Shown piece by piece: positions 6,466 through 44,059 of a DNA stretch of 64,000 nucleotides. The translations under genes and the position numbers were made by a program. Source of the DNA: Octopus sinensis (taxonomy: Eukaryota); assembly GCF_006345805.1 (NCBI RefSeq), contig NC_043018.1, positions 24,428,001-24,492,000 of the forward strand, read 5' to 3'. Under the pieces are notes generated by a model. The model worked only from the letters and a program-made list of their open reading frames with translations, did no database searches and was not told the DNA's origin. Position 1 is the stretch's first letter. The number at the start of each line of letters is the position of its first letter.

Positions 6466-6990
6466 ATCATCATTTAACGTCCGCTTTCCATGCTAGCATG
6501 GGTTGGACGGTTCAACTGGGGTCTGGGGAGCCCGAAAGCTGCACCAGTCCAGTCAGATCTGGCAGTGTTTCTACAGCTGGATGCCCTTCCTAACGCCAAC
6601 CACTCCGAGAGTGTAGTGGGTGATTTTATGTGCCACCGACACAGGTGCCAGACGAGGCTGGCAAACGGCCACGCTCGGATGGTGTTTTTTATGTGCCACC
6701 GACACAGGTGCCAGACGAGGCTGGCAGACGGCCACGCTCGGATGGTGTTTTTTATGTGCCACCGACACAGGTGCCAGACGAGGCTGGCAGACGGCCACGC
6801 TCGGATGGTGTTTTTATGTGCCACCGACACAGGTGCCAGACGAGGCTGGCAGACGGCCACGCTCGGATGTTGTTTTTATGTGCCACCAACACAGGTGCTA
6901 GATGAGGCTGGCGAACGGCCACAATCGGATGGTGTTTGTCATGTGCCCACCGCACTGACTACGGCACTGATGGATTTCTTGTGTGCCACA
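6466..6990 (-). mobile_element. RTE-tailed SINE with an internal 62-63-bp tandem array (~5.3 units, 6628-6960)
   Basis: Reverse complement ends gcatggaaagcggacgttaaatgatgatg. Unit atgtgccaccgacacaggtgccagacgaggctggcagacggccacgctcggatggtgtttttt at 6628, 6691, 6754, 6816, 6878. Related copies at ~5277, 37728, 43730, 54832, 63750. Confidence 0.88.
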
Positions 6991-7213
6991 GGATACAAAT
7001 TCCATTGATGTTCATCTATTTTGTCTATTTTGATTTGATTTGATTTTCACTTGCCTCAACCGGTCTTCACAAATAAATTAGGTAGAGTGGCCTAAAGTGT
7101 ATATTGGCTACCTTTTATGAGAAACAGGTCACATGAGACATTGCTCATCATCAAACAGGCTACACTACTAAAAAAAATTCAAGGGCTACAATTTACTTGT
7201 GAATGGCCTAAAA

Positions 7214-20760: not shown

Positions 20761-21387
20761 ATTGTTTGAGAATCACTGAAGCAGGGTGTGATTAGAGGGA
20801 CGTTTGGCTGCTATTTCTAACAGGCTGTATTGTCATCATAAGACTACCGAAACAATAATTTATTTGAATAAATTATTCAGAAATAAAAACAATAACAAAC
20901 ATGATTTTAAGTTAATCATCTCGAATCTCATTGTCCAGAGGGTGGGGGGGTGACAGTGGGGTAGGGGGTTTTCACTTCCTTTTGTTGTATTGTTGCTGAG
21001 TAAATTTATGATGAAATGTGTTCCATCCATGGCCACCCCGTCTTATATATATACACATATATATGACTACGTTATCAAATGTATATCCTTTCTTCATCTA
21101 GGACAGTAGGGTGTGATTTGAGGGAGAATTTGACTACTATTTCTTGCAGGATCAACAACTACATAGAGGCCCCCCCCCCCGGCTAAATTTTGTTGTTGTT
21201 GCTGTTAGAGGAGGATGAAGCAGTGAAGGGAGCAGGAATTCCTCCAAGCAGTATTGGGGAGTGGCCAGGGTGGAGGGCTTTGATTTTTATCTACTTTTGT
21301 GGAGTGGGGGTGAGTTTGGTTGGGGTATTTAAGAGAAAGTTGGTGTTTTTTTTTTTTAGTGTGTTTTTGTGTTTGTGTTTGGTGTTG

Positions 21388-21573
21388 TTACCGTAAAAAC
21401 TGTTGTAACATGTCAATCGGTAAGGGGAATACGATTGTGGAATTCTTCTCGGCCGAGATTGTACTTAGCGTCTGGAGATAACGGAGCTGCAAAGCTGACG
21501 GGGACTCATTGATGACGTCAGCTGCTTCCTTAAGGGCACGAGAAGCTTGATGTTCGCCTTCAGCAGCAATTAC
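21388..21573 (-). CDS. STOM: Stomatin-family terminal exon 8 ([61 protein letters not shown])
   Basis: Acceptor ttttcattctttccAG, 186 nt ending in [27 protein letters not shown] is the conserved stomatin C-terminus. Confidence 0.96.
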
Positions 21574-21594
21574 CTGGAAAGAATGAAAAGGAAA

Positions 21595-21626
<32 letters not shown>

Positions 21627-22481
21627 AGTCTGAGTGAAATCAGTTGAAAACTGTGGAAATGCATAATGACCATACACACACAAACAGACATCTATTTTAT
21701 ATATATATCATCATCCTTTAATGTCTGCTTTCCATGCTGGCATGGGTTGAATGGTTTGACTGAAAACTGGTAAGCCAGGGAGCTGCACCAGATTCCAATC
21801 TGATTTGGCAAGGTTTCTACGGCTGGAAGCCCCTCCTAATGCCAATCACTCCGAGAGTGTGGTTGGGTAGTTTTTACATACCACTGGCATGGGTGCCATT
21901 GACCCGACACCAACATCAGCCACGACTACGGTTTCACTCGGCTTGAGAGGTCTACACAACCACGGTGTATTCTTTTCTACTGTAGGCACAAGGCCTGAAA
22001 TTTTGGGGGAGGTGGGGCTGTTAATTAGATCAACCCCAGTATGCAACTAGTACTTAATTTATCAACCCTGAAAGGATGAAAGGCAAAGTCGACCTCAGTG
22101 GAATTTGAACTCAGAACGTAAAGACAGACGAAATACTGCTAAGCACTTTGCCCAGCGTGCTAACAATTCTGCCAGTTCACTGCCTTACAAGGATGGTGCA
22201 TTGCCAAAGGTGTTGGTCACTTTTCACTGCCTCAATGAGGCCTAACACTCGAATGGTGCTTTTTTTCTTGGATATATTTGATTTTTTAGTTGGTATAAAA
22301 GTTCACAAAGCACTGAACAGAATATGTTGTCCTTGAAGACAACATCCCTGAAAGCTTTAGTCCTTGTTATGTACCCTTGTTAGCTCTTCTGTCTTGTGAG
22401 TTGTTTTCTTCTATTTTTCACTTTATGTCAAGAAGTATACAATCTTAACTATGGAAAGAAATTGAAGAGAAAATCTATCTG

Positions 22482-22519
<38 letters not shown>

Positions 22520-24041
22520 TGTTATTGTATGACAAAATGTAAGGGGTGGGGGAGAAATACTAAGAGTGGAAAAAAGAAAAAGGAGAGAACCAGAAATGAA
22601 AGAGAGCAAAGGAGAGAGACACACATAGAAATAAAAGAGAGAGAGAGAGAGATGTAGAAAGAGTGAGAGAAACGTTGAAAAAGTGAAAGAGATGTAGAAA
22701 GAATGAGAGATATGTAGAAAGAATGAGAGATATGTAGAAAGAGAAATATGTGTAAAGAGAGAGAGAGAGAGATGTAAAGAGATGTACAAAGGGAGGTAGA
22801 GGTGTAGAAAGAGGAGAGATGAATAAAGGGAGGGAGAGACATAGAGAGAGAAGGCGAGACATATAAAGAGAGATGTAGCAACAGATATAAAGATATTGAA
22901 GAATGAATTGATTTTTTGACATCAACTTTGAGCAAAAGTAATTATTGATCAGTAATTATTTTAATCATTTTCACAGCTGGATGAATGCCCCCACATCTCA
23001 CTAATTAAGCAATCATCTAGGAGGGACTAAAGGAATTTAGTTCTATAGTTGGATACCAGCCTCTCCTTACTATTAACTATTTGACTGTGAAGTTATTGAT
23101 TAGCCCCAGGTTAGGCTTCATCCAGTAGATATGACTAAAGGTGTTCCAGGCATGACCATCCTGCCTTTATTTCAGGAATAGTGTACGTTGGATTATATCA
23201 TCCAATATGTCCGTCTTTAAAATGGTAAAGATTTATGATTTGACTGCTATCTCTAATATGTTGTGCAACCTCATAGTGGTACCCAACAGAAAAGAGGGAT
23301 TGAACTTGGTTTTTGCGCAGGCCAAACTGGAGCAGTAAAGCAAGTGGACATGACTCCATAACAATAGTAAAATTGTGATGTCAAGACGAGGAGACAACAT
23401 ACACACACACACGTATATATATATATATATATATACACATATATATACACATATAAACATACATATGCACATTTCACATAAATGTACACACATATATACA
23501 TAAATACACACACACATATACATACATAAGCAGATATAGACACACTCATATATACATGCATACACATACAATGATGTGTACATATATACACACTGATATA
23601 TGCAGAGATTTGCATACCCACATGCACACACAAATATGAACATGACATACTTGCATACACACGCATCAGCACAAACACACACACACGCAATATATCATCA
23701 TCATCATTTAACGTCCGCTAGTCATAAATGACAGAGAAATATTTTATGAGATTTTATTTAACAATAAGAAATTTCTAATATCACAACAGATTGTTTCGTA
23801 ACTTAAAAACATGTAAGTAATTTATATTATTATATTTATTAACAAATAAATTACTTACATACCTGCATTAATGCAAAATGCAAAAAAAATCCTGATTTAT
23901 ACACATGCATACATATCTTCACAGGTACCCATAATAGTTGCATACCTGTGAACATATTGACACACACACACACACACATACAGACAGAATCATAGAGACA
24001 CAGTCACACACAGAACTAGGAAATAATAGTTAGTCACTGAC

Positions 24042-24120
24042 CTTAGCTTTTGCTTCTCTAGATGCTTCAGCCTCTGCAGCCATTGCTCTTTGTAACTGGA
24101 CTGGTAATCTGACATCTTTT
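24042..24120 (-). CDS. STOM: Stomatin-family exon 7 (KDVRLPVQLQRAMAAEAEASREAKAK)
   Basis: Acceptor ctctctccacAG, donor AAG|GTCAGT, 79 nt. Coiled-coil QRAMAAEAEA motif. Confidence 0.96.
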
Positions 24121-24179
24121 CTGTGGAGAGAGAGGAGAGAGAGAGAGACGATGAAAATGTATGTGTGTGTGTGTGTATG

Positions 24180-24210
<31 letters not shown>

Positions 24211-24254
24211 TATATATAAAGTTAATCCAAACAAGAAAACACAAAAAAACACAG

Positions 24255-24420
24255 CAACGCGAGGACGTGGAACAAATAAAGTATTATTGGACGCTCAGGG
24301 AAGAAGGAGGGTTTAACGTTTCGAGCGGAGCTCTTCGTCGGAAACAAAGGAGAAGGAAAGATCCCGAGAAGGGAAGACAGAGGAAAAAAATTGCTGGCGG
24401 TGCTCACGAGGTCACATGTT
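24255..24420 (-). mobile_element. Penelope-like terminal-repeat relic containing a minimal hammerhead-like motif (24311-24345)
   Basis: Minus strand GUUU-CCGACGA-A-GAGC(UCC)GCUC-GAAA-CG-UU-AAAC. Confidence 0.6.
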
Positions 24421-25989
24421 GAAAGAACGGATATATTCACTATGAGGATATTTAAACCTCTTATAAGGATAGCTTCATCCAAGATATTCTGGTTTAATAT
24501 ATTGTATTTTGAAGAGATATTTCTTCAATAAATATTTTATAAAACATCGAATATTATAATAAAGTTTGAAAATGGGGAGAATCAATGGATATAAATTAAT
24601 TAATTAATTAATTAATTAACATTGCTAACAATTGTTTCACTTCACACCCAATTTAAATTACACACACATGCTTGTCCAATCTATCACATGTGTTACCCAG
24701 GATATATTTCCCTGGCATCCATACATCATATATGACACATGTTCCCAATTTTTTCCAACCACCAGAGTAATTTGGGATTTAGGAAAGCTTTATATTACTC
24801 AGAATGTATGAAACAAGGGATAACTAGTCTGAAACAAGCATGGACGTTTAGGACAGATTTATGGAAATGTTTGGGCTAAGGGTTAAGGACATCCCAATCC
24901 TACCAGTGTTTTTGCTGTTTCAAAACACACCTTTACCATCTGTTGTCTAAAGTTCTATGATTTCGGCATGTTTAACAATAGAGTGACTGGCTTCAGTATG
25001 CCAATAGATTTAAAGAAAACTTCCTTTAGGAATAACAGGACAATAACAAATGGTTGGGACCATGAGACATGTTTATAGTATCAAGAGAAGACAACAAGTA
25101 TACAAAAATACATGGAAAAAATTATAAAATTATATATAACAGATATCTGAGTTTATCAACTTAACATAGAAGATAATTAGTTTTCTTGGCTTAGATTAAG
25201 AATAATAATATATTTACATGCATGTGTCCTAAACACACACACATTATGTGAAGGAAATTCATTATATTATCAGACTGATAATACTGTGGAACAAAATGTT
25301 TTTTCCTTTTGTTCTTTGTCTAGTAAGGGTTGTCTCCTGTTTGTTTCTATCTAGAAATCAAAGGAAGTGACTACTATTCCCTTCAACCTTTGCTTTTGTG
25401 ACCTGAACATCAATGTTTTGAAGCCGATTTATTTTCCATTACATTTCAGACAGATTCAGCTCCGAGTTGCTGAAGCAGAAATATCATTATAGCAAATATT
25501 CTGCTCAATGCCACAGATTTGCTTATTGTCTTTGGCCAGTAGGTGTTATCTCCTGTTTGTTTCTATCTAGAAATCAAAGGAAGTGACTACTATTCCCTTC
25601 AACCTTTGCTTTTGTGACCTGGACATCAATGTTTTGAAGCCAACCTATTTTCCATTACATTTCAGAAAGATTCAGCTCTGAGTTACTGAAACAGAAATAT
25701 CAGCAAATATTCTGCTGAATACCACAGATTTGCTTGTCAGTTGCTCAACCTTAACCCCTTGAGCATGTCTCTTGGTGGCTGAAAATATGTGCATCTCTGA
25801 ACATGAGTGAGTGTAGTCAGGGAACATCATAGCCATGTGTTGAGAGGGGTTGTTTAGGGTTTGAATAAATATCATAACAAAAGCAAAGTTTGAAGGAAGT
25901 ATTAGTCATTTTTCATGCTTTCTAAGGGGAAGCAAATAGGAAACCCAAGGACATAATTAACACAAGAGATGCAATCGATAAACACTTAC

Positions 25990-26045
25990 ATAGCAACTCT
26001 CTCCACGTGGATTCCCCAGTTCTCTGTTGCATCATCTAGAGCTGA
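25990..26045 (-). CDS. STOM: Stomatin-family exon 6 (SALDDATENWGIHVERVAI)
   Basis: Acceptor ttttctctctttcAG, donor AT|GTAAGT, 56 nt, phase 2. LDDAT..WGI.VERV motif; not in the ORF track. Confidence 0.94.
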
Positions 26046-26740
26046 CTGAAAGAGAGAAAAACAATATTTAATATAGTTACCCTTAGAAGGCGACGAGCTG
26101 GCAGAAACATTAGCACACCAGGTGAAATGCTTAACGGTATTTCATCTGCCATTACATTCTGAGTTCAAATTCTGCCAAGGTCAACTTTGCCTTTCATCCT
26201 TTCGGGGTTGATAAATTAAGTACCAGCTGCATACTGGAGTTGATCAAATTAACTGGTCCCCTCCCCCAACATTTCGGGCCTTGTGCCCAGAGTAGAAAAG
26301 AATATCTTTACCATTCATTCTTTACTTGTTTCAGTCATTTGACTATGGCCATGCTGGAGCACCTTCTTGAAGTTTTTTTTTCTTTTTTTTTAGCTGAACA
26401 AATCAATCCTAGGACTTATTTTTTTAAAGCCTAATACTTATTCTATTGGTCTTTTTTGCTGAACTGCTAAGTTACAGGGATGTAAACACACCAACACTGG
26501 TTGTCAAGCAGTAGAGGGGTGACAAACAGACACAAAGACACACACACACACGTGTGTGTGTATTTATCTATAGTAGAAAACATTTTCCCAAGGTGCCACT
26601 CAGTGGGACTGAACCCAGAACCATGTGGTTGGGAAGCATGCTACTTACCACACAGCCAAGCCAGTATATAAAACATTCGCATATACATAAAACATGTATT
26701 ACACACACACACACACACACACACCACACACACACACACA

Positions 26741-27407
26741 CGCATATACATGCAGTTATTGTGCTGAAGAAAATAGCACAAATGGAATGTATTCATATGC
26801 TTATTTCACTCAATGTGAGGTTTTATCAGATTTAAAGTTTTCATGCTTGCACAGCAGTTTGCATAAAATAGATATTGTTTGTCTCGTTAATAACAAGCTG
26901 TCAAAAAATCGTTTCAGTAATGACAAGCTGTCAAAAGCACAGATATGTAAATTTGACAAGATATGCAGTGCTGTCAAATGCATAGACATGGCAAAATTTA
27001 TGCTTGGTAAACATCATCATTGGTGTCCACACAAAGACATGGACAAGCACACAAGTACATACACACACACACACACCACACACACACACACACGCATATA
27101 CATGCAGTTATTGTGCTGAAGAAAATAGCACAAATGGAATGTATTCATATGCTTATTTCACTCAATGTGAGGTTTTATCAGATTAAAGTTTTCATGCTTG
27201 CACAGCAGTTTGCATAAAATAGATATTGTTTGTCTCGTTAATAACAAGCTGTCAAAAAATCGTTTCAGTAATGACAAGCTGTCAAAAGCACAGATATGTA
27301 AATTTGACAAGATATGCAGTGCTGTCAAATGCATAGACATGGCAAAATTTATGCTTGGTAAACATCATCATTGGTGTCCACACAAAGACATGGACAAGCA
27401 CACAAGT

Positions 27408-27446
<39 letters not shown>
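26741..27446. repeat. Near-identical 352-bp tandem duplication bounded by (CA)n
   Basis: cgcatatacatgcagttattg at 26741 and 27093; copies differ by a 1-nt indel (gatttaaag / gattaaag) and CA-run length. Confidence 0.95.
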
Positions 27447-27450
<4 letters not shown>

Positions 27451-28439
27451 TATGCTGAGGTGTGTGGCGTACTGGTTAGGATGTTGTTCTGAAGATAATC
27501 CTTTCTACTGTAGGCACAAGGCCTGAAAATTTGAGGGAGGGGATAGTCGATTACATCGACCCCAGTGTATAACTGGTACTTATTTTATTGACCCTGAAAA
27601 GATGAAAGGCAAAGTCGATCTTGGCAGAATTTGAACTCAGAACATAGCGGCAGACGAAATACCTATTTCTTTACTATCCACAAAGGGCTAAACACAGAAG
27701 GGACAAACAAGGACAGACAAATGGCTTAAGTTGATTATATCGACCCCAGTGCATAACTGGTACTTATTTAATTGACCCCGAAAGGATGAAAGGCAAAGTC
27801 GACCTCGGTGGAATTTGAACTCAGAATGTAATGGCAGATGAAATACTGCTAAGCATTACGCCCGGTGTGCTAAAGTTGCTCTCAAGATAATAAAGTCGTT
27901 TGTTTGATTCCTGAGTTGAGCAGCACATTGTCTCCTCTTTGTGTTACTCCTGTCCACTTAACTAAAAGCTGAGTGCACTGGAGTAACTTGAAGAGGAGAT
28001 GGTGTTTTTCAAAGTGGGTTCCATGAAAAAAATGCTGGGTGCTGCAAGATCAGGTCTTTCCACCATTTAGCCCTTCAACATTTAAACCAACCATATCAGC
28101 TCTGAATATTCTACCCCATTTTACGTTCAAACAGATCTGGCCTTTCACACCTATCCTACAGTGTCATTCAAAAAATAAACAATCATCATCATCATCATTT
28201 GATATCCGTTTTCCATGCTGGCATGAGTTGAATGGTTTGACAGGAGCTGGCCAGATTCCAGTTGTCTGTTGTGGCATTGTTTCTACAGCTCGATGACCTT
28301 CCTAATACCAACCACTTTACTGGGTGCTTTTTATGTGCCACCGGCATGAGTGCCTTTTATGTTGCATCAGCACCGTAAAGGACAAGGCAGTATGAAGGGA
28401 TGACAGTGATTTTACTTATCTTGACTCGTCTTGTCAAGT

Positions 28440-28810
28440 ACAGAAAGTCGCCACAACTCCTGGTCACCTTATCATTTCATCATTGAGGCCAGGTATCTGA
28501 AGATTCTTTCTCATCCTTTCATCCCACAGGTTTCCTCCACAATTAGAGCTCAGTACTTCTTTATGCAGCTGTTCTCATCCATATGCATCACATGACCAAA
28601 CCAGTGAAGTCTTCTCTCTTGCACACAACGTCTGATGCCTCTTATCCCTAGTTTTCCTCTTAAATCATTTACACCCTGTCTTGCATCCAGCAGAGCACCC
28701 AGCTTCATTCCTTTCAAGTCTTCGCAAGTCCTCTGTAGTCAAGGCCCATGTTTCACTGCCATGTAGCATAGCTGTACATACACAGGCATCATACAATCTG
28801 CCTTCCATTA
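28440..28810 (-). mobile_element. RTE-clade LINE relic
   Basis: Minus strand reads GRLYDACVCTAMLHGSETWALTTEDL, an RTE RT C-terminal motif. Confidence 0.75.
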
Positions 28811-29392
28811 AATTCTCAGAGTTATGAGATAATGCCTGATTAATTTAAAACAATGTGAATAAATAAACATTACATTTGACAGAATAATATGAATTGTAAA
28901 AGGTTAAAGTAACCATATGCAGCCCAAACATTCTACCCATTTTATGTTCAAACTGACCAGATCTGGCCCTTTACACCTACCCTACAATACAATTTTAAAA
29001 ATAAGCAACCACATCATTGAAGTCTCAAAGCTATGAGATAATCCATGATTAACTCAAAACAATGTGAATAAGGATTACATTTGACAGAATAATCTGAATG
29101 CCAAAGGGTTAAAGATGAGAAGCTGTTCAGGGAGATTTTAAGGTAACGGAGGTTCTATTACTTGTTTCAGTCATTTGACTGTGATCATGCTGGAGCACCA
29201 AAACCTTTGAAGAGGGTAAGGAGATTGCTGAGAGAGATTATAGAAAGGATAGGGAAATTGCTGATTGAGATTTTAAAAACAGTAGGGTGTTTGTAAGGAG
29301 TTATTTTTCAAAATAGAAAGTTTGTTAAAGGTCATTTCTTGAAATTCTACCTCACATAAAAAGAATGCTCCAAAAAACAAAACATAACTGAC

Positions 29393-29596
29393 CTGCATTC
29401 CTTGACTTACTGCCTCTCTGTCTGTTAGGATTTCTGATAGATTTTTAGTGCCCAGCATATTTCGCAGGGTTGTCTGGGCGAGAAGTCGGGTAGAGTGGTG
29501 AGCATTCTCGACATTAGCGACAGATATAGTGGGATTTGAGACCCGATAGTAGACAACTGCATCGACGGACACTGTCACACTATCACGACTCAACAC
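29393..29596 (-). CDS. STOM: Stomatin-family exon 5, SPFH core (VLSRDSVTVSVDAVVYYRV...DREAVSQGMQ)
   Basis: Acceptor atgttgtAG, donor CAG|GTCAGT, 204 nt = 68 codons. DSVTVSVDAVVYYR and LLAQTTLRN motifs. Confidence 0.97.
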
Positions 29597-29758: not shown

Positions 29759-29841
29759 CTCTTGGGGTGGCACATCAAATGACAACGTACGCAGGTCAAC
29801 TTTGGTGTAACTCTCAACACAAGGTAACACAAAGAAGATTC
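29759..29841 (-). CDS. STOM: Stomatin-family exon 4 (GIFFVLPCVESYTKVDLRTLSFDVPPQE)
   Basis: Acceptor ttccttctAG, donor GAG|GTGAGT, 83 nt. FxLPC and VDLRT.SFDVPPQE motifs. Confidence 0.96.
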
Positions 29842-30205
29842 CTAGAAGGAAACAAAAATTGGAAGATATCAAAGCACAGAGAGAGAGGAGAAAAGACAAT
29901 ATATACATCGTTTAATCAACATCATCATGAATAACATTTAATGTCTGTTTTCCATGTGGGTATGGGTTGGACAGCTTGGCAGGGTCAGGGACCACACCAG
30001 GCTCCATAATCTGTTTTGGCTTGGTTTCTACAGCTGGATGCCCTTCCTAATGACAAAAGAATACAACTGGGATCGCAACCACCCCCTGCAGGAGCCTCAG
30101 GTGGTTTCACTCAATAAACACTCACAACGCCCGGTCTGGGAATTGAAACCGTGATCCTATGACTGCGAGTCCACTGCCCTAACTACCGGGCCATTGCGCC
30201 TCCAC

Positions 30206-30253
<48 letters not shown>

Positions 30254-30477
30254 TGTATATATGTTTGTGCATCTGTGTGTCCTGCCACCATCACTTGACA
30301 ACCAATGTTGGGGTGTCTACATCCTTGTAACTTAGCAGTTCAGCAAAAGACACCGATAGAATAAGTACTAGGCTTACAAAGAATAAGTTCTGGAGTTGAT
30401 TTGTTCAACTAAAGGTGGTGCTCCAACTTGGCTGCAGTCAAATGACTGAAAAGAATAAAACAATATATGTATGTATG

Positions 30478-30532
<55 letters not shown>

Positions 30533-30559
30533 CGTCAAAGATAAGATAAGACAATGTAC

Positions 30560-30631
30560 CTGGTCCTTTGGCACCACCAGACAACAGCCTTCCAAGACGA
30601 AATATCACTGCACGTTCATATTCTGGACAAC
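30560..30631 (-). other. Second copy of stomatin exon 3 with a 1-nt deletion (72 nt)
   Basis: Same splice sites as 31628-31700, but reads gttgtccAGaatatg instead of gttgtccAAGaatatg. Part of an ~1.07-kb tandem duplication. Could be a cassette exon, a pseudoexon or an assembly artefact. Confidence 0.6.
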
Positions 30632-31262
30632 CTGCATTTTGGAAAATAAATTTGTATTTTATGAGATTTTAAAAAACTCTTTATCAATTGGTTTTTATGG
30701 TTTACAAAGTATATGTGTGTATGTGTAGATTTATATGGTACGGGGGTAAGGTGAGGAGTGAGGAATACTCGGCCACCTTCACACATACAATTAGTAAGGA
30801 GTTTGGGTGGTTCAACAACTAGAATAATAAAATAATAAAAAACACAATTTCAGGCCTTGTGCCAATAATAGAAAGAAAGACCCATTTGTTACAATGATGA
30901 GGATTCAGTTGATCTGATCAATGGAACAACCTGCTCATGAAATTAATGTGCAAGTGGCTGAGTACTCCACAGATATGTGTAACCTTAATGTAGTTCTCAG
31001 GGAGATTCAGCATGACACAGAGTGTGACAAGGCTGGCCCTTTGAAATATAGGTACAACTCATTCTTGCCAGCTGAGTGGAGTGGACTGATGTGAAATGAA
31101 GTGTCTTGCTCAAGGACACAACATGTCACCAAGAATCGAACTCAAAACCTCACAATTGTGAGCTGAATACCCTAACCACTAAGCCACGTGTCTTCACACA
31201 ACTAGAATACTCCTTGTTGAGAAAATAAAGAGAAGATTCATTTCATTTGATTTAAATATATA

Positions 31263-31327
<65 letters not shown>

Positions 31328-31551
31328 TGTATATATGTTTGTGCATCTGTGTGTCCTGCCACCATCACTTGACAACCAATGTTGGGGTGTCTACATCCTT
31401 GTAACTTAGCAGTTCAGCAAAAGACACCGATAGAATAAGTACTAGGCTTACAAAGAATAAGTCCTGGGGTTGATTTGTTCAACTAAAGGTGGTGCTCCAA
31501 CTTGGCTGCAGTCAAATGACTGAAAAGAATAAAACAATATATGTATGTATG

Positions 31552-31600
<49 letters not shown>

Positions 31601-31627
31601 CGTCAAAGATAAGATAAGACAATGTAC

Positions 31628-31700
31628 CTGGTCCTTTGGCACCACCAGACAACAGCCTTCCAAGACGAAATATCACTGCACGTTCATATTCTTGGACAAC
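31628..31700 (-). CDS. STOM: Stomatin-family exon 3 ([25 protein letters not shown]), intact 73-nt copy
   Basis: Acceptor aaatgcAG, donor CAG|GTACAT. Canonical stomatin [16 protein letters not shown] motif; phase 0 in, phase 1 out. Confidence 0.95.
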
Positions 31701-32333
31701 CTGCATTTTGGAAAATAAATTTGTATTTTATGAGATTTAAAAAAACTCTTTATCAATTGGTTTTTATGGTTTACAAAGTATATGTGTGTATGTGTAGATT
31801 TATATGGTACGGGGGTAAGGTGAGGAGTGAGGAATACTCGGCCACCTTCACACTTATACAATTAGTAAGGAGTTTGGGTGGTTCAACAACTAGAATAATA
31901 AAATAATAAAAAACACAATTTCAGGCCTTGTGCCAATAATAGAAAGAAAGACCCATTTGTTACAATGATGAGGATTCAGTTGATCTGATCAATGGAACAA
32001 CCTGCTCATGAAATTAATGTGCAAGTGGCTGAGTACTCCACAGATATGTGTAACCTTAATGTAGTTCTCAGGGAGATTCAGCATGACACAGAGTGTGACA
32101 AGGCTGGCCCTTTGAAATATAGGTACAACTCATTCTTGCCAGCTGAGTGAAGTGGACTGATGTGAAATGAAGTGTCTTGCTCAAGGACACAACATGTCAC
32201 CAAGAATCGAACTCAAAACCTCACAATTGTGAGCTGAATACCCTAACCACTAAGCCACGTGTCTTCACACAACTAGAATACTCCTTGTTGAGAAAATAAA
32301 GAGAAGATTCATTTCATTTGATTTAAATATATA

Positions 32334-32366
<33 letters not shown>

Positions 32367-32587
32367 CAGTGACGTATGGTGGTTGTTGTATTAGGCATGC
32401 TGTCACACCCAATGCCACCAAATTTCAAGCAAGGATATAACAAAAGCTTTCCATTAAGATTTGTGATTAAATTAATGAGTGAGGTTAATGAATTTATAAT
32501 GAATTTGTCATTTTCAATGGGTGTGCAGTACACACCCAAGATATACACCTCTGATATATATATACATACATACATACATACATACAT

Positions 32588-32779: not shown

Positions 32780-32967
32780 TAAATACGTAATCAGAGAAAA
32801 GCAGATGTAGACAAACAGAAAGCAAAAAACAAGACAGACAGGCAGACAGATAGGCAGATAGACAAACAGATAGGCAGACAGATAGACAGATAGGCTGACA
32901 GATAGACAGATAGGCAGTTAGATAGACAGATAGACAGATAGGCTGACAGATAGACAGAGAGTCTGAC

Positions 32968-33034
<67 letters not shown>

Positions 33035-33227
33035 CAGGTAGATAGATAGACAGGTAGATAGATAGATAGATAGACAGGTAGACAGATAGGCAGATAGACA
33101 AACAGATAGGCAGACAGATAGACAGATAGGCTGACAGATAGACAGATAGGCAGTTAGATAGACAGATAGACAGATAGGCTGACAGATAGACAGAGTCTGA
33201 CAGATAGACAGAGTCTGACAGATAGGC

Positions 33228-33278
<51 letters not shown>

Positions 33279-33485
33279 AGATAGACAGGTAGATAGATAG
33301 ACAGGTAGATAGATAGATAGATAGATAGACAGTAGATAGATAGATAGGCAGATAGACAAACAGATAGGCAGACAGATAGACAGATAGGCTGACAGATAGA
33401 CAGATAGGCAGTTAGATAGACAGATAGACAGATAGGCTGACAGATAGACAGAGTCTGACAGATAGACAGAGTCTGACAGATAGGC

Positions 33486-33555
<70 letters not shown>

Positions 33556-33640
33556 GCAGACAGATAGATAGATAGATAGAGATAGATAGATAGACATAGA
33601 AAGATAGACAATTAAACAAATAGATAGATAGAGGGAAGAG
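32780..33640. repeat. (GATA/GACA)n satellite with a higher-order repeat
   Basis: Block ggcagatagacaaacagataggcagacag... recurs at 32853, 33089 and 33347. Confidence 0.9.
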
Positions 33641-36397: not shown

Positions 36398-36507
36398 CTT
36401 GAAACAGAGCATAAGGGAGAATGGAATGGTTGCAAATACCAGTAACCATGACAAAATGGTTAACACCCATCCACAGATTCCTAAACCTTCATAGGTCTCA
36501 CCAGCAG
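36398..36507 (-). CDS. STOM: Stomatin-family exon 2, hydrophobic membrane hairpin (AGETYEGLGICGWVLTILSWLLVFATIPFSLMLCFK)
   Basis: Acceptor ttttgtcttttcAG, donor AAG|GTGAGT, 110 nt. Conserved G.CG, hairpin Pro and CFK of stomatins. Confidence 0.93.
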
Positions 36508-39090
36508 CTGAAAAGACAAAAGAAAATTAACAAAACCGATTTATTTTTTCTTTCTTTCGACTAAAGGCACAAAGCCTGAAATTTTTTTGGTGGTGGGGGT
36601 GGGGTGAGGGTGATGTGCCAGTCCCTATGCACCAAAGGTCCCTATATTGGTCCCTATGCGCCAAAGGTTCTTATTTTATTGACTCTGAAAGAATGAAAGG
36701 CAAAGACAACCTCAGAAGAATTTGTGCTTGGAACGTAAAAAACTGAAAGAAATGCTGAGCATTTCATGTGATTCATTTAAGAATTCTGCCAGCTTGTTGC
36801 CTTCTTTCTAATTTTGGCACAGGGCCAGCAATTTTGAAGGGAGGTGGCAAGTGATTACATCGACCTCAGCATCAAGTACTGGGGGTTCAATGTACTCAAC
36901 TGGTCCTTTATTTTATTGACTCCAAAAGGACGGAAAGCAAAGTTAACTCTGGCAGAATTTGAACTTACAATGTTTTATGCCAGAAGAAATACTGGTAGAC
37001 ATTTTGGCTACAAGAATAATAACGGTGAATGCCTTTTGCTGTTTTCACTCGATGGGAATAATGGTTGAGACATTATAAAAGAAGTGGATCTTACAGAATT
37101 GAGCAAAAGAATATAGGTACGTAAAACAACAATGAACAAAAACTGACATGAATATTCCCTAATAGGGGACACAGCGGTCTGAAATCAAAACAGAGAACTA
37201 CCCCACAGTTCTAACATTACCCTGGCAATGAAGAGCAGGTGCCTTGCCCACATTCCTCTTTGACTGTTGAGGGCAGATTTTCTGTGGTTGGAAGCTCTTC
37301 CTGTTTTTTTCTACTCTAGGCACAAGGCCCGAAATTTTGGGGGAGGGAGCTAGTCAATTAGATTGACCCCAGTACGTAGCTGGTACTTAATTTATCGATC
37401 CCAAAAGGATGAAAGGCAAAGTCGACCTTGGCAGAATTTGAACTCAGAATGTAAAGACAGATGAAATACTGCTAAGCATTTTGCCTGACGTGCTTACATT
37501 TCTGCCAGCTCTTCCTGTTGCCAACTCTTTTCTGTTTCCAAGAAAGGTAATATTTCTCCATGGCTTGGCATGTCTTCAAAGAATATTGGAAATGAATGAC
37601 ACTGCCTGTATGACAGGGACACTCATTTACGACAATCATGAAGTGTCAAGATGAGGAAACACAAGTGAACACGTAACTATAGATACATAAATACACACAC
37701 ATATATTTTTATACATACACACATACATCATCATCGTTTAACGTCTGCCTTCCATGCTAGCATGGGTTGGACGGTTTGACCGGGGATCTGGGAAGCCAGG
37801 AGGCTACACCAGGCTCCGGTCTTATCTGGCAATGTTTCTACAGCTGGATGCCCTTCCTAACGCCAACCACTCCGTGAGTGTAGTGGGTGCTTTTTACGTG
37901 CCACCTGCACTGGAGCCAGGTGAGGCTGGCATCGGCCACGGTCGGATTGGTGCATTTTACGTGCCACCTGCACGGAAGCCAGTCGAGGCGGCACTGGCTT
38001 CGGCCACGATTCGGATGGTGCTTTTTACGTGCCACCGACACGGACATATATATATACAATATATATATAAATATATATATATACAATAGGCTTCTTTCAG
38101 TTTCCATCTACCAAGTTCACTCACAAGGCTTTGGCTGGCTCAAGGTTGTAGTTAAAGACACTTGTCCAAGAGGCCATGCTGTAGAACAGAACTTGAAACT
38201 ACGTAACTTGGAAACAAACTTCTTAATTACACACACACAAATATGAGGACTGTCCATTTCTATCTGAAGAAGACCATCACTAACTATTAAAAGAATCATG
38301 CAGTCAACAAAAACTCTTTTATAGTCATACACACACACACACACACACACACAGAATCATCATACACAACCAGGTTATTTAAATTTCCATCACCCAAATC
38401 CACCTACAAGGCTTTGGTCAGCCTGAAGGAATGGTAAAAATGCTTCCCAGTCCCACTGTGTGGCACTTTGGCCAAGTGTCTTCTACTATAGCCAGAGGCC
38501 AGCCAAAACTTTGCAGCTGGATTTGGTAGATGGAAACTGAAAGAAGCCTGTTGTGTATATGTGTATGTGTGTGATTGCTTGTTTCCTTGTATTGTCATTG
38601 TATGATGGTTGTAAATGACTGTCATCGTCATCATACAAGCAATGTCATTCATTTCCAATATTCTGTGAAAACTTGTCTGGCCATGGGGGAATATTACCTC
38701 CCTTGATTGGAAACATGAGGGTTGGTGACAGGAAAGGCTTCCAGCCATAGAAGCTCTGCCACAGTAAAACACTGTTTGACCCATGCAAGCATGGAAAAGT
38801 GGGTGTTAAAACGATGACACACACACATGCGTATCATCATTTTAACACTCTGTGTGTGTGTGTGTGTGCAAGACATAAATGATGTCCCTGTTTTGTTTTC
38901 TACATGGACTCTGTATAACACTAAATATGGACTTTATAGCAAAGGATACAATTTCCAATACATACACAGAAATACACATGGAGTTCTAGACACTTGTTAC
39001 TTGTCATGCAATTTAAGATATAAATCACACAGGATGAATACATACACTTATATGTGTTTGTGTGTGCATGTGTGCGTGTATATATATATT

Positions 39091-39302
39091 AAGGTGGCAA
39101 GCTGGCAGAAACGTTAGCTTGCCGGGTGAAATGCTTAGCAGTATTTCATCTATCTTTACGTTCTGAGTTCAAATTCCATTGAGGCCGACTTTGCCTTTCA
39201 TCCTTTCGGGGTCGATAAATTAAGTACCAGTCGTGTACTGGGGTCGATCTAATCAACTGGACCCCTCCCCAAAAATTCCAGGCCTTGTACCAAGAGTAGA
39301 AA

Positions 39303-39334
<32 letters not shown>

Positions 39335-40502
39335 AAACTTGTGTATTGTTGTTATTTAGCCCCAAGACAGGTCTGATGAAACAGACTTTCGTTTACAATC
39401 CCTTTAGGCATGATAATCCAGTCTTTATATATATAAATCATGGACTTACCCTTTTTCGTTTTTTTAAGTAATAGTAGAGAGTGATTGGACTGCTATTTCT
39501 AGCATGCCTTGTCCACATAGAAATCCACCTTGTTTCCTTTTGCCCTGTGTGTGTGTGTGTATGTGTGTGAGGGTGTGTGAAAGTGTATGTGGATGGGTTG
39601 GTTCATCAGGATTTCATTGTTTAACGCTGTTGTCTGTTACACGGCGAAATTTATAAACACCTGCGTATATGCGTATGCATTGCTATTTATGAAGAATGCA
39701 CACACATACACACACACATGTATGTATGTGTATATGTGTGTATGTATAGGTATGTATATTTGAATGTATGCATGCACACACATTTACACAAGTAAGCACA
39801 CTCATGTGTGTATGTGTGTGTGTGTGAAACTACATACATATGCACATTCTTATTTCTGAAAATAATTTGCATGTGTGCATACGTGTATGCATGTGTGTGT
39901 GTATATGTATACACACATGTATGTAAATATATATTTACTAACACATATACATACATACATATGCATATAAATATATATACACACACACACATATGCATAT
40001 AAATATATATACACACACACATATGCATATAAATATATACACACACACACATATGCATATAAATATATATACACACACACACATATGCATATAAATATAT
40101 ATACACACACACACATATGCATATAAATATATACACACACACACCATATGCATATAAATATATATACAACACACACACATATGCATATAAATATATATAC
40201 CACACACACACATATGCATATAAATATATATACACACACACATATATATTATATATATATATATATATATATTAAGGTGGCAAGCTGGCAGAAACGTTAG
40301 CTTGCCGGGTGAAATGCTTAGCAGTATTTCATCTATCTTTACGTTCTGAGTTCAAATTCCATTGAGGCCGACTTTGCCTTTCATCCTTTCGGGGTCGATA
40401 AATTAAGTACCAGTCGTGTACTGGGGTCGATCTAATCAACTGGACCCCTCCCCAAAAATTCCAGGCCTTGTACCAAGAGTAGAAAAGTGTGTGTGTGTGT
40501 AT

Positions 40503-40556
<54 letters not shown>

Positions 40557-40956
40557 TTGTGTATTGTTGTTATTTAGCCCCAAGACAGGTCTGATGAAAC
40601 AGACTTTCGTTTACAATCCCTTTAGGCATGATAATCCAGTCTTTATATATATAAATCATGGACTTACCCTTTTTCGTTTTTTTAAGTAATAGTAGAGAGT
40701 GATTGGACTGCTATTTCTAGCATGCCTTGTCCACATAGAAATCCACCTTGTTTCCTTTTGCCCTGTGTGTGTGTGTGTGTGTGTGTGTGTTGTGTGTGTG
40801 TGTGTGTGTATGTGTGTGAGGGTGTGTGAAAGTGTATGTGGATGGGTTGGTTCATCAGGATTTCATTGTTTAACGCTGTTGTCTGTTACACGGCGAAATT
40901 TATAAACACCTGCGTATATGCGTATGCATTGCTATTTATGAAGAATGCACACACAT

Positions 40957-40960
<4 letters not shown>
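39091..40960. repeat. Near-identical duplication (39091-39715 and 40274-40960), each copy starting with a SINE
   Basis: aaggtggcaagctggcagaaacgttagcttgccggg at 39091 and 40274; copies differ mainly in microsatellite length. Confidence 0.92.
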
Positions 40961-41031
<71 letters not shown>

Positions 41032-41064
41032 TATACACACACACATATATACACACACATATAT

Positions 41065-41095
<31 letters not shown>

Positions 41096-41545
41096 CACAC
41101 ACATATATACACACACATATATATTATATACACACACACATATATATATATACATATATACACACACATATATTATATATATATATATATACATATATAC
41201 ACACACATATATAATATATATATATATACACACATATATATACACACATATATATATATATAATATATATACACACACCACACATATGCATATAATATAT
41301 ATACATACACACACACACACTATATATATATACACACACACACACATATATATATATACATATATACACACACACACACACACATATGCATATAATATAT
41401 ATACACACACACACACATATATATATATACATATATACACACACACACACACATACATATATATATACACACATATATATACACACACCACACATATGCA
41501 TATAATATATATACACACACACACACATATGCATATAATATATAT

Positions 41546-41597
<52 letters not shown>

Positions 41598-41875: not shown

Positions 41876-41948
41876 CTCCAAACACAACCTGTCTTTCTTC
41901 CGAGACATTGGTCAACGGAATCTTTTGTTGATTCTCCATCTCAGACAT
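41876..41948 (-). CDS. STOM: Stomatin-family gene, probable coding exon 1 (MSEMENQQKIPLTNVSEERQVVFG, 73 nt, phase 1)
   Basis: ATG with A at -3 and an in-frame TAG 5 codons upstream. Donor GAG|GTAGGA in phase 1, matching exon 2. Total CDS becomes 864 nt = 287 aa + stop, a typical stomatin length. The N-terminus is not conserved, so the call rests on phase and length. Confidence 0.7.
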
Positions 41949-44059
41949 GATGTTCAGGTGCTAGGTATAATTCCAACTATAACCACTACCTCCACCACCG
42001 CCAACACTACGTAATAACAATAGTAGTAGTAGTAGTCATAACATGTAACAGTATTCCTGCTATTACTTCTACCACAACATCAACAGTGGGACCATTACAC
42101 AGGCTTGCTGCAACCACTATTGCAATGCTGGTACTGTTAATATCACCACCACAAGCAGCAGTACCACCACCACCACCACCACCACCAAAAGCAGTTAGTT
42201 ATATCCCAATTATTACAACAACAAAAGCCAACAATAGAAAGAGAGAGAGAGAGAGAGACAGAAAGAGACAGACAGACAGAGGTGAAGGTGTGAGGACAGG
42301 TGTGAGAGAAGGCAGAAGCACAGGGAGAGATAAGGGGGTGTATGAGTGCGAGCACGTGTGTGGGAGGGACGTGTAGGAAGGGAGAAGGTGTGAGGAGGGA
42401 GGGAGTGAAAGTGAGAGGGGGAGTGAGAGGAAAGGAGAGCAAGTAAGAGAGCCTTTGGCTTAATCGCACAGATTTTCTGGAAATAGCAGCCAATTCTCAC
42501 TCAAATCTAAATTTAGCAGCTTTGAAAAAAAAATGTCGCTGCGTGTTGGATAATGCGATCCTAGGTGCACTGTGGACAGACTAAAAACAAACAAAACAAG
42601 AAGTCTAGGATGGCCGTGGTTGGAATGTCTGGTCATTAGTCTGCATGATCAAAGCTGACCTGGAACTCAGTAAGAACAACAGACAAATGACAGACAAGGA
42701 ATTGAATGAAGAGACACAGATTTTGTAGAGTTGTGTCTAGTGTTTAATGATGGTGGTGGTGGGGGGGAGGTGATGGGGTAGGGGAGAGATGGAAGAGTGG
42801 AGAGGGATGAAGAATGTGGGAGGGGGAGATAAGGAGATGAGAAATGGAAAGAGAGAGAGGGTAGGGAGATGAAGAGAGAGGAGATGGTGAAAAGGGAGGG
42901 GAGAGGTGAAGACGTGGGGGGCGGGACGAGGGCGAAGAGAGAGGAAGTGATTAGAGAAAGGCAGAGCGAAGAGAGAGAGAGTGGATGCGAAGAGAAGGAT
43001 GGGAAGAGAGAGATATGGTGGGGAGGAGAAAGAGAGGGCTGTGAAGAGAGACAGGGTGGATAGAGAGGGAGGGAGGAGAGAGAAAAACTGATGAAGAGAA
43101 TAAAAAACATGTAAAGCTACATAAAAGAAATAAGAAAAAAAGGGAGCAGGAGGGGGGGGGCATTGATGAAAGGAAGGGAGTAGAGTTGCCCCACCCGCCC
43201 ACTCACCTACCGTCCCCCACCCCTATGGCACTCTGCATCCAGCTCAGCTTTTATAAACCAGTATTGTAATTAATTCAGTCAGCCTTTATTGTTGTTGTTA
43301 TTGTTGGAAGAGCAGGTTTAATGTTGGGGGTTTGAATAAACACCTTTACCTGCCCCTAACTGTCCACCCCTCTCTCTCCCTCCCTCCCTCCCGGTCTTTG
43401 TGGTTTAAGCTGATTTCAGCAACAATTAGGAAAGCAAACCTATACAAATGGCTGTTGATCTAATATAAAATGGATTACATGGTTTTCCTCTTGCTATAGC
43501 TGTTTAGCCCCAGGCTAGCAATCTGTGTTATTGAGCAAAGCACTTCATTTAACGTTGCGCCAGTCCTTCTTGTTGGCTTGCTCACTTAGTCAGCAGGGTA
43601 GCATCATTTGAAGGCTAAAATGATGCAAAGCGCATTGTGACCAGTGATATAACAACATCTGATAGTCTGGTTGGTTACGTGATCAAATGATATATACATA
43701 CACACACAAGGGCCATTGCCAGCCTCGCCTGGCCCCTGTGCCGGTGGCATGTAAAAAGCACCATCCAATCGTGGCCGTTTGCCAGCCCTCGTCTGGCACC
43801 TGTGCCGGTGGCACGTAAAAAGCACCATCCAATCGTGGCCGTTTGCCAGCCTTGTCTGGCACCTGTGCCAGTGGCACGTAAAAAGCACCCACTACACTCA
43901 CAGAGTGGTTGGCGTTAGGAAGGGCATCCAGCCGTAGAAACACTGCCAAATCAGACTGGGCCTGGCACAGCCTCCTGGCTTCCCAGACCCCAGTTGAACT
44001 ATCCAACCCATGCTAGCATGGAAAGCAGACGCTAAACGATGATGATGATGATGACACAA

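What the first reader, a model, noticed from the sequence alone, without database searches (positions are those of the whole stretch)
30560..31700. Duplicated stomatin exon 3 whose 1-nt deletion restores the reading frame
Seen: exon 3 (73 nt, phase 0 to 1) occurs twice with identical splice sites. The transcript-downstream copy (30560-30631) lacks one A and is 72 nt. An exact 73-nt duplicate would frameshift the mRNA if both copies were spliced in. With the deletion, exon 3 + exon 3' stays in frame and gives ...[38 protein letters not shown]..., a 24-aa insert with a new Cys. The deletion also creates a CAG 9 nt into the exon; using it gives a 63-nt in-frame cassette (EYERAV...KGP). Exon 3' alone after exon 2 hits a TGA at codon 9. 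Established: stomatins are palmitoylated, oligomeric SPFH proteins that modulate ASIC/Piezo-type mechanosensory channels. Inference: this may be a newly born cassette exon for a stomatin isoform with a doubled N-terminal SPFH segment. Caveat: single-base indels in short runs recur in other duplications here, as long-read consensus errors would.
Basis: partly seen in the sequence, partly recalled or inferred. Interest (0 to 1): 0.8.

Follow-up and report, generated by a model that had tools for sequence, protein, structure and literature searches.

The report
Young tandem duplicate of stomatin exon 3
A 1.07-kb stretch of an octopus stomatin gene, carrying exon 3 and its splice sites, sits twice in tandem. 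The second copy lacks one base, so splicing in both copies would stay in frame, but nothing shows it is used, and the copy or its missing base could be an assembly error.

Summary
Window 30209-31295 and 31283-32366 are two tandem copies of a ~1074-nt unit, 98.7% identical. Each carries exon 3 of a minus-strand stomatin gene with identical splice contexts. Copy 1 is 73 nt and copy 2 is 72 nt. Including both exons adds an in-frame 24 aa. Exon 3' alone stops at codon 9. An exact duplicate would frameshift.

The duplication is very young. Octopus bimaculoides and Argonauta hians have one exon 3, and theirs matches copy 1.

The functional reading has no support:
- All annotated cephalopod orthologues are canonical, including O. 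sinensis and O. vulgaris, which equal the window protein.
- Two searches of a 15-billion-protein collection found no exon3-exon3' junction, though these searches had limited power.
- Exon 3 encodes the start of SPFH1, which holds salt-bridge residues of the 16-mer cage.

The unit is bounded by (TA)n tracts and is one of three such near-identical tandem duplications in 64 kb. In its unique sequence the copies differ only by indels, a homopolymer-boundary change and microsatellite-length or boundary differences. These are the kinds of error long-read consensus makes.

Best reading: a neutral, recent microsatellite-mediated duplication with an unproven extra exon (~0.55). Assembly artefact ~0.3. 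Functional cassette ~0.1. Reads and RNA junctions would decide.

The parts
31283..32366 (-). Tandem duplication unit, copy 1 (transcript-upstream). Order along the transcript: (AT)n(AC)n, SINE-like A, unique sequence with exon 3, (TA)n, SINE-like B, (TA)n.
   Evidence: Self-BLAST and pairwise alignment.
30209..31295 (-). Tandem duplication unit, copy 2 (transcript-downstream). It overlaps copy 1 by 13 nt inside the junction (TA)n tract.
   Evidence: Against O. bimaculoides, copy 2 has three derived changes: the exon 1-nt deletion, a 2-nt deletion and a C>T.
31628..31700 (-). Exon 3, 73 nt, phase 0 to 1. Encodes [24 protein letters not shown](G), which is human stomatin I56-P79.
   Evidence: It is 73/73 identical to O. 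bimaculoides exon 3. Alignment to solved human stomatin.
30560..30631 (-). Exon 3', 72 nt. Same splice sites as exon 3. One A is missing (CCAAG to CCAG, at 30624/30625).
31255..31340 (.). Junction microsatellite between the copies, (TA)~27(CA)~6. It looks like a hybrid of the downstream-flank (TA)n and the upstream-flank (AT)n(AC)n.
   Evidence: Sequence read; TRF row 31277-31336.
32325..32370 (.). Upstream boundary microsatellite, (AT)n(AC)n(AT)n.
30205..30268 (.). Downstream boundary microsatellite, (TA)n. A tRNA-like SINE (~30060-30210) follows and is not part of the duplication.
31971..32266 (.). SINE-like interspersed repeat A inside the unit (sister copy 30900-31195). It holds one of the three clean substitutions.
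31307..31542 (.). SINE-like interspersed repeat B inside the unit (sister copy 30233-30468). It holds two of the three clean substitutions.
36398..36507 (-). Exon 2 (membrane hairpin, ...ATIPFSLMLCFK). It ends in phase 0.
29759..29841 (-). Exon 4 (G)IFFVLPCVESYTKVDLRTLSFDVPPQE. It accepts phase 1.
21388..29596 (-). Exons 5-8 of the same gene: 29393-29596, 25990-26045, 24042-24120, and 21388-21573 including the stop.
   Evidence: The spliced product equals O. sinensis XP_036368034.1 from exon 2 onward.
41876..41948 (-). Alternative first coding exon 1b (MSEMENQQKIPLTNVSEERQVVFG). The distal exon 1a lies outside the window.

Best explanation
The feature is a very recent tandem duplication of about 1.07 kb inside the stomatin gene (named 'band 7 protein AGAP004871-like') of an Octopus vulgaris/sinensis-type genome. 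It most likely arose by unequal exchange or replication slippage between the (TA)n tracts that bound the unit. Exon 3 and all its splice signals were carried along passively.

The downstream copy, exon 3', has since lost one A. That produces three possible mRNAs:
- E2-E3-E4 gives the canonical protein.
- E2-E3-E3'-E4 gives an in-frame 24-aa repeat at the very start of the SPFH1 domain.
- E2-E3'-E4 hits a premature stop at codon 9 and should be removed by nonsense-mediated decay.

I read exon 3' as an unselected by-product, not an established cassette exon. It is either skipped or included at some level with a product that is tolerated or mildly harmful. The deletion is as well described as the first disabling hit on a redundant exon as a frame rescue, because it stops exon 3' from replacing exon 3.

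Shown: the duplication, the exon lengths, the frames, the single-copy state in outgroups, and the canonical annotations. Inferred: the mechanism of origin, the age, and the splicing outcome.
For: - Two copies, 98.7% identical, with breakpoints inside (TA)n/(CA)n tracts.
- Two further near-identical microsatellite-bounded tandem duplications lie in the same 64 kb (26705-27453 and 39079-41043). All three are single copy in O. bimaculoides. This points to a general local process, not something specific to the exon.
- O. bimaculoides and Argonauta hians have one exon 3. The O. bimaculoides exon is 73/73 identical to copy 1.
- Both copies carry derived changes relative to the outgroup, as expected of two separate DNA lineages.
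- Intron identity to O. bimaculoides is ~83-86% over ~34 My (PMC10700109). That puts 0.47% copy divergence at roughly 1 My or less, after or around the 2.5-My vulgaris/sinensis split. This dating is inference.
- There are no N runs in the window, so no gap separates the copies. A gap between copies is a hallmark of false duplications in PMC9516828.
- All annotated orthologues are canonical. No insert-bearing protein turned up.
- The Pfam Band_7 profile starts exactly at exon 3. In the +24 isoform it simply starts at the second copy with an unchanged score, which leaves the first copy as an orphan linker.
- Exon 3 holds E59, R67 and R70 of the human 16-mer.
Against: - No reads, no second vulgaris/sinensis assembly and no RNA data could be reached. 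The duplication is therefore not verified outside this assembly, and the splicing outcome is untested.
- In the unique part of the unit the copies differ only by error-like changes: a 2-nt indel, a T7A3/T6A4 boundary shift, the exon's 1-nt deletion, a (TA)/(CA) boundary shift and a (TA)3 length change. The three clean substitutions all lie inside multi-copy SINE-like repeats. That pattern also fits an artefact or mis-polishing.
- Identical splice signals predict that exon 3' would be recognised. 'Usually skipped' is therefore not the default expectation.
- An 8% coincidence estimate for the frame-preserving deletion is low enough that selection cannot be dismissed.
Confidence: 0.55

Rival explanations
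1. Assembly artefact. The locus has one exon 3 in the animal. The assembler laid down the same ~1.07-kb stretch twice, either as two haplotypes or as two noisy read sets. The joins fall in (TA)n tracts, and the 1-nt 'deletion' is an unpolished consensus error or a haplotype variant.
For: - There are three near-identical microsatellite-bounded tandem duplications in 64 kb. The gapless 90-kb Argonauta locus has no tandem duplication of comparable size.
- The third duplication has zero substitutions over its non-microsatellite part, yet microsatellite-length differences of 35, 31 and 12 nt.
- In unique sequence the stomatin copies differ only by indels, a homopolymer-boundary change and a (TA)/(CA) boundary shift. 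Clean substitutions sit only in multi-copy SINEs, where short-read polishing can cross-talk.
- Copy divergence of 0.47% is within the reported 1.22% heterozygosity of O. vulgaris. That assembly is ONT R9.4.1, NextDenovo and Hypo.
- All annotations are canonical.
Against: - There is no gap between the copies, whereas false duplications on one scaffold typically flank gaps.
- Long reads easily span 2 kb, so a 1-kb false tandem copy inside a contig is not a usual failure mode. This rests on my knowledge, not a test.
- Each copy has its own derived states relative to the outgroup.
- I could not establish which assembly the window comes from.
Confidence: 0.3
2. The duplication is real, and the 1-nt deletion was favoured because it turns a frameshifting double inclusion into an in-frame 24-aa (or 21-aa) cassette. 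This yields a stomatin isoform with a doubled first SPFH1 segment and an extra cysteine near the membrane.
For: - The frames work exactly as stated.
- The splice signals of the two exons are identical from -45 to +34, so exon 3' should be visible to the spliceosome.
- The deletion is derived and specific to copy 2.
- The Pfam profile tolerates the insert as an N-terminal extension.
- The chance of a frame-preserving indel landing in the exon is roughly 8% (my estimate from two indels in ~920 nt).
Against: - No protein with the junction exists among the best hits of two searches of the 15-billion-sequence collection. No annotated isoform in O. sinensis or O. vulgaris has it, although the O. vulgaris annotation used Iso-Seq and PASA alternative-splicing updates.
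- The element is far too young for conservation to support function.
- The doubled segment carries E59-R70 (inter-subunit) and R67-D89 (intra-domain) salt-bridge residues and follows membrane helix H2 directly in a tightly packed 16-mer. A 24-aa insert there is more likely harmful than useful. This is inference.
- The deletion may be a consensus error.
Confidence: 0.1
3. The duplication is real but the deletion is a sequencing error. The animal would then carry two exact 73-nt copies. Such a pair behaves as a nascent mutually exclusive pair: one copy included gives the normal protein, and both included gives a frameshift and decay.
For: - Single-base indels recur in the other duplications of the window.
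- Polishing is weakest in near-identical repeats (my knowledge).
- An exact duplicate gives GCPRI then a stop. That is the classical NMD-enforced exclusivity situation discussed for tandem exon duplications (papers listed, not read in detail).
Against: Nothing in the sequence itself argues for an error at this base. AA is only a 2-base run, shorter than the homopolymers that usually cause long-read deletions.
Confidence: 0.05

Closest known systems
Tandem exon duplication giving homologous alternative exons (mutually exclusive or cassette), as catalogued for human and insects (PMC8373072, PMC5740500; found)
   Same: Two adjacent, homologous exons have the same phase, the same splice sites and a short intron between them. 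They were produced by local tandem duplication within a gene.
   Different: - Known functional cases are old, conserved across species and diverged in sequence. Here the pair is ~99% identical and absent from O. bimaculoides and Argonauta.
- The lengths differ by 1 nt, so exon 3' cannot substitute for exon 3 (stop at codon 9). It could only act as an add-on cassette.
- No transcript evidence is available.
Stomatin / SPFH (Band 7) proteins: human STOM 16-mer cage (PDB 9z7u, 9wkz, 9oh9, 9wmj; PMC12344292), MEC-2, podocin
   Same: The host gene is a clear stomatin orthologue. The match to human stomatin chains has E about 1e-123, and the Band_7 domain, hydrophobic hairpin and C-terminal region are all present.
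   Different: No known stomatin has a repeated first SPFH1 segment. The hypothetical +24 isoform would place a second E59/R67/R70-type segment between helix H2 and SPFH1.
False (heterotype or homotype) duplications in genome assemblies (PMC9516828)
   Same: The copies are near-identical, their divergence is within the species' heterozygosity, an exon is apparently gained, and the differences are error-like.
   Different: There is no gap between the copies, and the unit is only 1 kb inside gapless sequence. Read depth and k-mer tests could not be run.

Membership tests
Stomatin / SPFH (Band 7) family (host gene) | Band_7 (PF01145) domain above the curated cut-off | tested here: met
   137.8 bits against a cut-off of 23.6, residues 61-233, profile positions 1-175 of 176.
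Stomatin / SPFH (Band 7) family (host gene) | Close full-length similarity to solved stomatin, including the N-terminal hydrophobic hairpin with its conserved Pro and Cys | tested here: met
   E=1.6e-123 to 9z7u over residues 52-306. The aligned residues include P47, C53 and C87 equivalents (ATIPFSLMLCFK ... LPC).
Stomatin / SPFH (Band 7) family (host gene) | Orthology to annotated cephalopod stomatin genes | tested here: met
   the spliced product equals O. sinensis XP_036368034.1 from exon 2 onward. Searches give the cluster members.
Tandem-exon-duplication-derived alternative exon (cassette or mutually exclusive) | Adjacent homologous exons with intact, equivalent splice sites | tested here: met
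   identical acceptor (-45) and donor (+34) contexts, with 996 nt between the exons.
Tandem-exon-duplication-derived alternative exon (cassette or mutually exclusive) | Each exon can be used alone in frame (mutually exclusive type) | tested here: not met
   exon 3' alone gives VVQNMNVQ then a stop.
Tandem-exon-duplication-derived alternative exon (cassette or mutually exclusive) | Inclusion keeps the reading frame (cassette type) | tested here: met
   72 nt gives an in-frame 24-aa insert, and 63 nt via the internal CAG gives 21 aa.
Tandem-exon-duplication-derived alternative exon (cassette or mutually exclusive) | Both copies conserved in related species | tested here: not met
   single exon 3 in O. 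bimaculoides (L001) and Argonauta hians (L002).
Tandem-exon-duplication-derived alternative exon (cassette or mutually exclusive) | Transcript or protein evidence that the extra exon is used | tested here: inconclusive
   no junction-bearing protein among the best hits; all annotations canonical. Power is limited because no octopus RNA-seq fragments of this gene appear in the collection.
False duplication (assembly artefact) | Gap (N run) between the duplicated pair | tested here: not met
   zero N in the window. Criterion taken from PMC9516828.
False duplication (assembly artefact) | Haploid or lower read depth, discordant or non-spanning reads, single-copy k-mers | not testable with these tools
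   No read data are available.
False duplication (assembly artefact) | Copy divergence at or below allelic divergence, with error-type differences | tested here: met
   0.47% against a reported heterozygosity of 1.22%. Unique sequence differs only by indels, a homopolymer-boundary change and microsatellite-length or boundary differences. A very young real duplication would show the same.

The most novel reading that the evidence does not exclude
A species- or population-specific tandem duplication of stomatin exon 3 is real, and both copies are spliced in. A compensating 1-nt deletion was favoured because it rescues the frame. Octopus would then make a stomatin with a repeated first SPFH1 strand and an added membrane-proximal cysteine. 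It would be a caught-in-the-act example of cassette-exon birth by duplication plus frame-correcting indel.
Probability: 0.1. Interest if true: 0.55.

Novelty: new member of a known kind. Interest (0 to 1): 0.25.

Why it matters
If real and expressed, this would be an unusually young example (about 1 My or less) of exon birth by tandem duplication. A single compensating indel would decide between a null allele and a new isoform. The gene's 16-mer cage structure is now solved, so the effect of doubling the first SPFH1 segment could be tested directly.

If it is an artefact, it is a useful warning. Kilobase-scale, microsatellite-bounded tandem copies with unpolished indels occur about three times per 64 kb in this assembly and can mimic exon gains.

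Either way the practical value is modest. It flags a locus to check with reads before any biological claim is made.

Tried and rejected
1. Fetching the same locus from O. sinensis and O. vulgaris. The genes are on record, but their ranges (110 kb and 117 kb) exceed the tool's 100-kb limit, so no DNA was returned. The shorter O. vulgaris isoform P0124 is not on record.
2. Looking up window ORFs antisense to exon 3 and exon 3' to find independent read-assembly contigs. Nothing is on record.
3. A protein search with the genomic ORF across exon 3'. It was swamped by YIYIYI low-complexity matches, with no octopus hit.
4. Structure prediction of the +24 isoform and a look-up of the spliced exon-1b isoform. 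I did not try to get round this.
5. Treating the multi-domain top hits P0001 and P0002 as insert-bearing. They contain two YERA motifs and, at 473-501 aa, I took them to be two stomatin units fused in one gene model, but I did not align them. Neither has the GCPEY or GPEYER junction.
6. Using copy divergence to separate paralogues from alleles. Rejected because unequal crossing-over between homologues, a false haplotype duplication and a young duplication all predict the same pattern.
7. Using the neighbouring POMT gene to reach the locus in other assemblies. Its 3' end lies near window ~1-3 kb, so a 10-kb flank cannot reach 30 kb.

Full report
**What is there**

The window carries, on the minus strand, most of a stomatin gene.

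| Exon | Window coordinates | Note |
|---|---|---|
| 1b | 41876-41948 | alternative first coding exon |
| 2 | 36398-36507 | |
| 3 | 31628-31700 | |
| 4 | 29759-29841 | |
| 5 | 29393-29596 | |
| 6 | 25990-26045 | |
| 7 | 24042-24120 | |
| 8 | 21388-21573 | includes the stop |

From exon 2 onward the spliced product is identical to O. sinensis XP_036368034.1. It matches O. vulgaris CAI9738956.1 over the same exons. It has a Band_7 domain and matches solved human stomatin at E about 1e-123. The distal first exon used by those annotated proteins lies outside the window. Their gene ranges are 110-117 kb.

Window 30209-31295 and 31283-32366 are two head-to-tail copies of a ~1074-nt unit. They share 98.7% identity over 1090 columns, with 5 substitutions and 3 indels. 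Each copy contains exon 3. Acceptor context is identical for 45 nt and donor context for 34 nt.

The upstream copy of the exon is 73 nt.
- Both exons included gives an in-frame insert, [24 protein letters not shown].
- Exon 3' alone gives VVQNMNVQ then a stop.
- The internal CAG acceptor gives a 21-aa insert.
- An exact 73-nt duplicate would give GCPRI then a stop.

One small correction: the original exon already has an AG at that position (CAAG). The deletion improves a cryptic acceptor rather than creating one.

**Anatomy and origin**

Read along the transcript, the unit consists of:
- (AT)n(AC)n
- a SINE-like repeat (31971-32266)
- about 430 nt of unique sequence ending in exon 3
- a (TA)n tract
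- a second SINE-like repeat (31307-31542)
- a long (TA)n tract

The junction between the copies (about 31255-31340) looks like the downstream-flank (TA)n fused to the upstream-flank (AT)n(AC)n. This is what unequal exchange or slippage between two (TA)n tracts about 1.07 kb apart would leave. That mechanism is an inference.

The same 64 kb holds two more near-identical, microsatellite-bounded tandem duplications:
- 26705-27099 / 27057-27453: 352-nt unit, one 1-nt indel in a T run.
- 39079-39782 / 40262-41043: no substitutions over its non-microsatellite part, but microsatellite-length differences of 35, 31 and 12 nt.

All three are single copy in O. bimaculoides. The exon duplication is therefore one instance of a local, exon-blind process, whether biological or technical.

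**Age**

O. bimaculoides (L001) and Argonauta hians (L002) each have a single exon 3. The O. bimaculoides exon is 73/73 identical to copy 1, and about 45 nt of upstream intron are also conserved.

With O. bimaculoides as outgroup, the derived changes are:
- Copy 2: the exon deletion, a 2-nt deletion and a C>T.
- Copy 1: an A>T at a T/A homopolymer boundary and an A>G.

Intron identity to O. bimaculoides is about 83-86% over about 34 My (PMC10700109). So 0.47% between the copies corresponds to roughly 1 My or less, around or after the 2.5-My vulgaris/sinensis split. This dating is inference.

**Is the extra exon used?**

I found no support.
- All annotated cephalopod orthologues are canonical across this junction. 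These are O. sinensis, two O. vulgaris isoforms, two O. bimaculoides isoforms, Argonauta hians and Acanthosepion, plus five transcript-derived proteins.
- A full-length insert-bearing query and an 88-aa junction query were searched against the 15-billion-sequence collection. None of the best hits had a GCPEYER or GPEYER junction. The two with a doubled YERA motif were the long top hits P0001 and P0002, which I took to be fused two-unit gene models without aligning them.
- The O. vulgaris annotation used Iso-Seq, RNA-seq and PASA alternative-splicing updates, yet lists only canonical forms.

The power of these negatives is limited. No short octopus RNA fragments of this gene appear in the collection. 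Transcripts from animals lacking the duplication would align to copy 1 anyway.

**What the insert would do**

Exon 3 corresponds to human stomatin I56-P79. In the 2.2-Å 16-mer structure this segment follows membrane helix H2 directly (C53 palmitoylated, K55 just below the membrane). It contains E59 and R70, which form an inter-subunit salt bridge in layer I. It also contains R67, which bridges to D89 inside SPFH1. The equivalent podocin residues are disease sites (PMC12344292; numbering from the alignment).

The Pfam Band_7 profile begins exactly at exon 3. In the +24 isoform the profile starts at the second copy with an unchanged score, which leaves the first copy as a 24-residue orphan between H2 and SPFH1. 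A 24-aa loop at the membrane interface of a tightly packed ring is more likely harmful or neutral than advantageous. This is inference.

**Selection or chance?**

Outside microsatellites the copies differ by two indels in about 920 nt, both in copy 2. The chance that at least one falls in the 73-nt exon is about 15%. Roughly half of 1-2-nt indels would make the exon a multiple of three. That gives about 8%, which is suggestive but not compelling (my estimate).

The same deletion also stops exon 3' from replacing exon 3. It can be read equally well as the first disabling mutation of a redundant exon.

**Real or artefact?**

For an artefact:
- Three such duplications occur in 64 kb, while the gapless 90-kb Argonauta locus has none of comparable size.
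- In unique sequence the differences are only indels, a homopolymer-boundary change and microsatellite-length or boundary differences.
- The three clean substitutions all lie in multi-copy SINE-like repeats, where polishing can cross-talk.
- Copy divergence is within the reported 1.22% heterozygosity of an ONT R9.4.1-based assembly.

Against an artefact:
- There is no gap between the copies, whereas false duplications on one scaffold typically flank gaps (PMC9516828).
- Long reads span 2 kb easily.
- Each copy has its own derived states.

I could not reach reads or the other vulgaris/sinensis assembly, and I could not establish which assembly the window comes from.

**Verdict**

| Reading | Probability |
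|---|---|
| Real, very young, microsatellite-mediated tandem duplication; extra exon an unselected by-product | ~0.55 |
| Assembly artefact | ~0.3 |
| Real duplication with an erroneous deletion | ~0.05 |

The feature is a new member of a known kind, tandem exon duplication. Interest is low to moderate until reads and RNA junctions are checked.

Noticed in passing
window 26705-27099 and 27057-27453: A 352-nt unit is tandemly duplicated at ~99% identity and bounded by (CA)n. The copies differ by one 1-nt indel in a T run. It is single copy in O. bimaculoides. It lies in the intron between stomatin exons 5 and 6.
   Followed up: partly
window 39079-39782 and 40262-41043: A tandem duplicate ~1.2 kb apart has zero substitutions over its non-microsatellite part (to ~39718) but microsatellite-length differences of 35, 31 and 12 nt. 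Only the first ~230 nt of the repeated segment, itself a multi-copy SINE-like element, could be matched to O. bimaculoides, where it occurs once. A 32-nt satellite (39945-40265) lies between the copies.
   Followed up: partly
window 41876-41948 (-): An alternative first coding exon (MSEMENQQKIPLTNVSEERQVVFG) matches the N-terminus of an O. bimaculoides isoform (A0A0L8IG19) and squid or cuttlefish transcript isoforms. The gene therefore has two promoters or first exons.
   Followed up: partly
window 20795-20839 (-) and 17575-17664 (-): These short stretches match the alternative C-terminal ends of two O. bimaculoides stomatin models (MMTIQPVRNSSQTSL and LVLTSTWNLFTDPLVERDMHYNIS). They may be alternative last exons or annotation read-through.
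   Followed up: no
window 431-796 (+): This ORF fragment matches PMT_4TMC (protein O-mannosyltransferase C-terminal region, 57 bits). It is an exon of the convergent neighbour gene that is also annotated next to stomatin in O. vulgaris.
   Followed up: partly
window 32832-33632: An ~800-nt satellite in intron 2 is built on a 20-nt unit (AGACAGATAGATAGACAGAT) over an (AGAT)n base, just upstream of the duplicated unit. A 615-nt (AT)n tract lies at 40979-41594.
   Followed up: no
window 37886-38044, 6474-7008, 43700-43900: A ~63-68-nt tandem-repeat motif recurs at three places in the window. Translated, it reads like ...GAFYVPPA.../...FTCHRHRCQTRLA.... It is probably the internal repeat of an interspersed element.
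   Followed up: no
window ~30060-30210 (-): A tRNA-like SINE (cacgtggaggcgcaatggcccggtagttagggc...) lies directly downstream of the duplication. O. bimaculoides appears to lack it in intron 3, with 131 nt there against ~296 nt here.
   Followed up: partly
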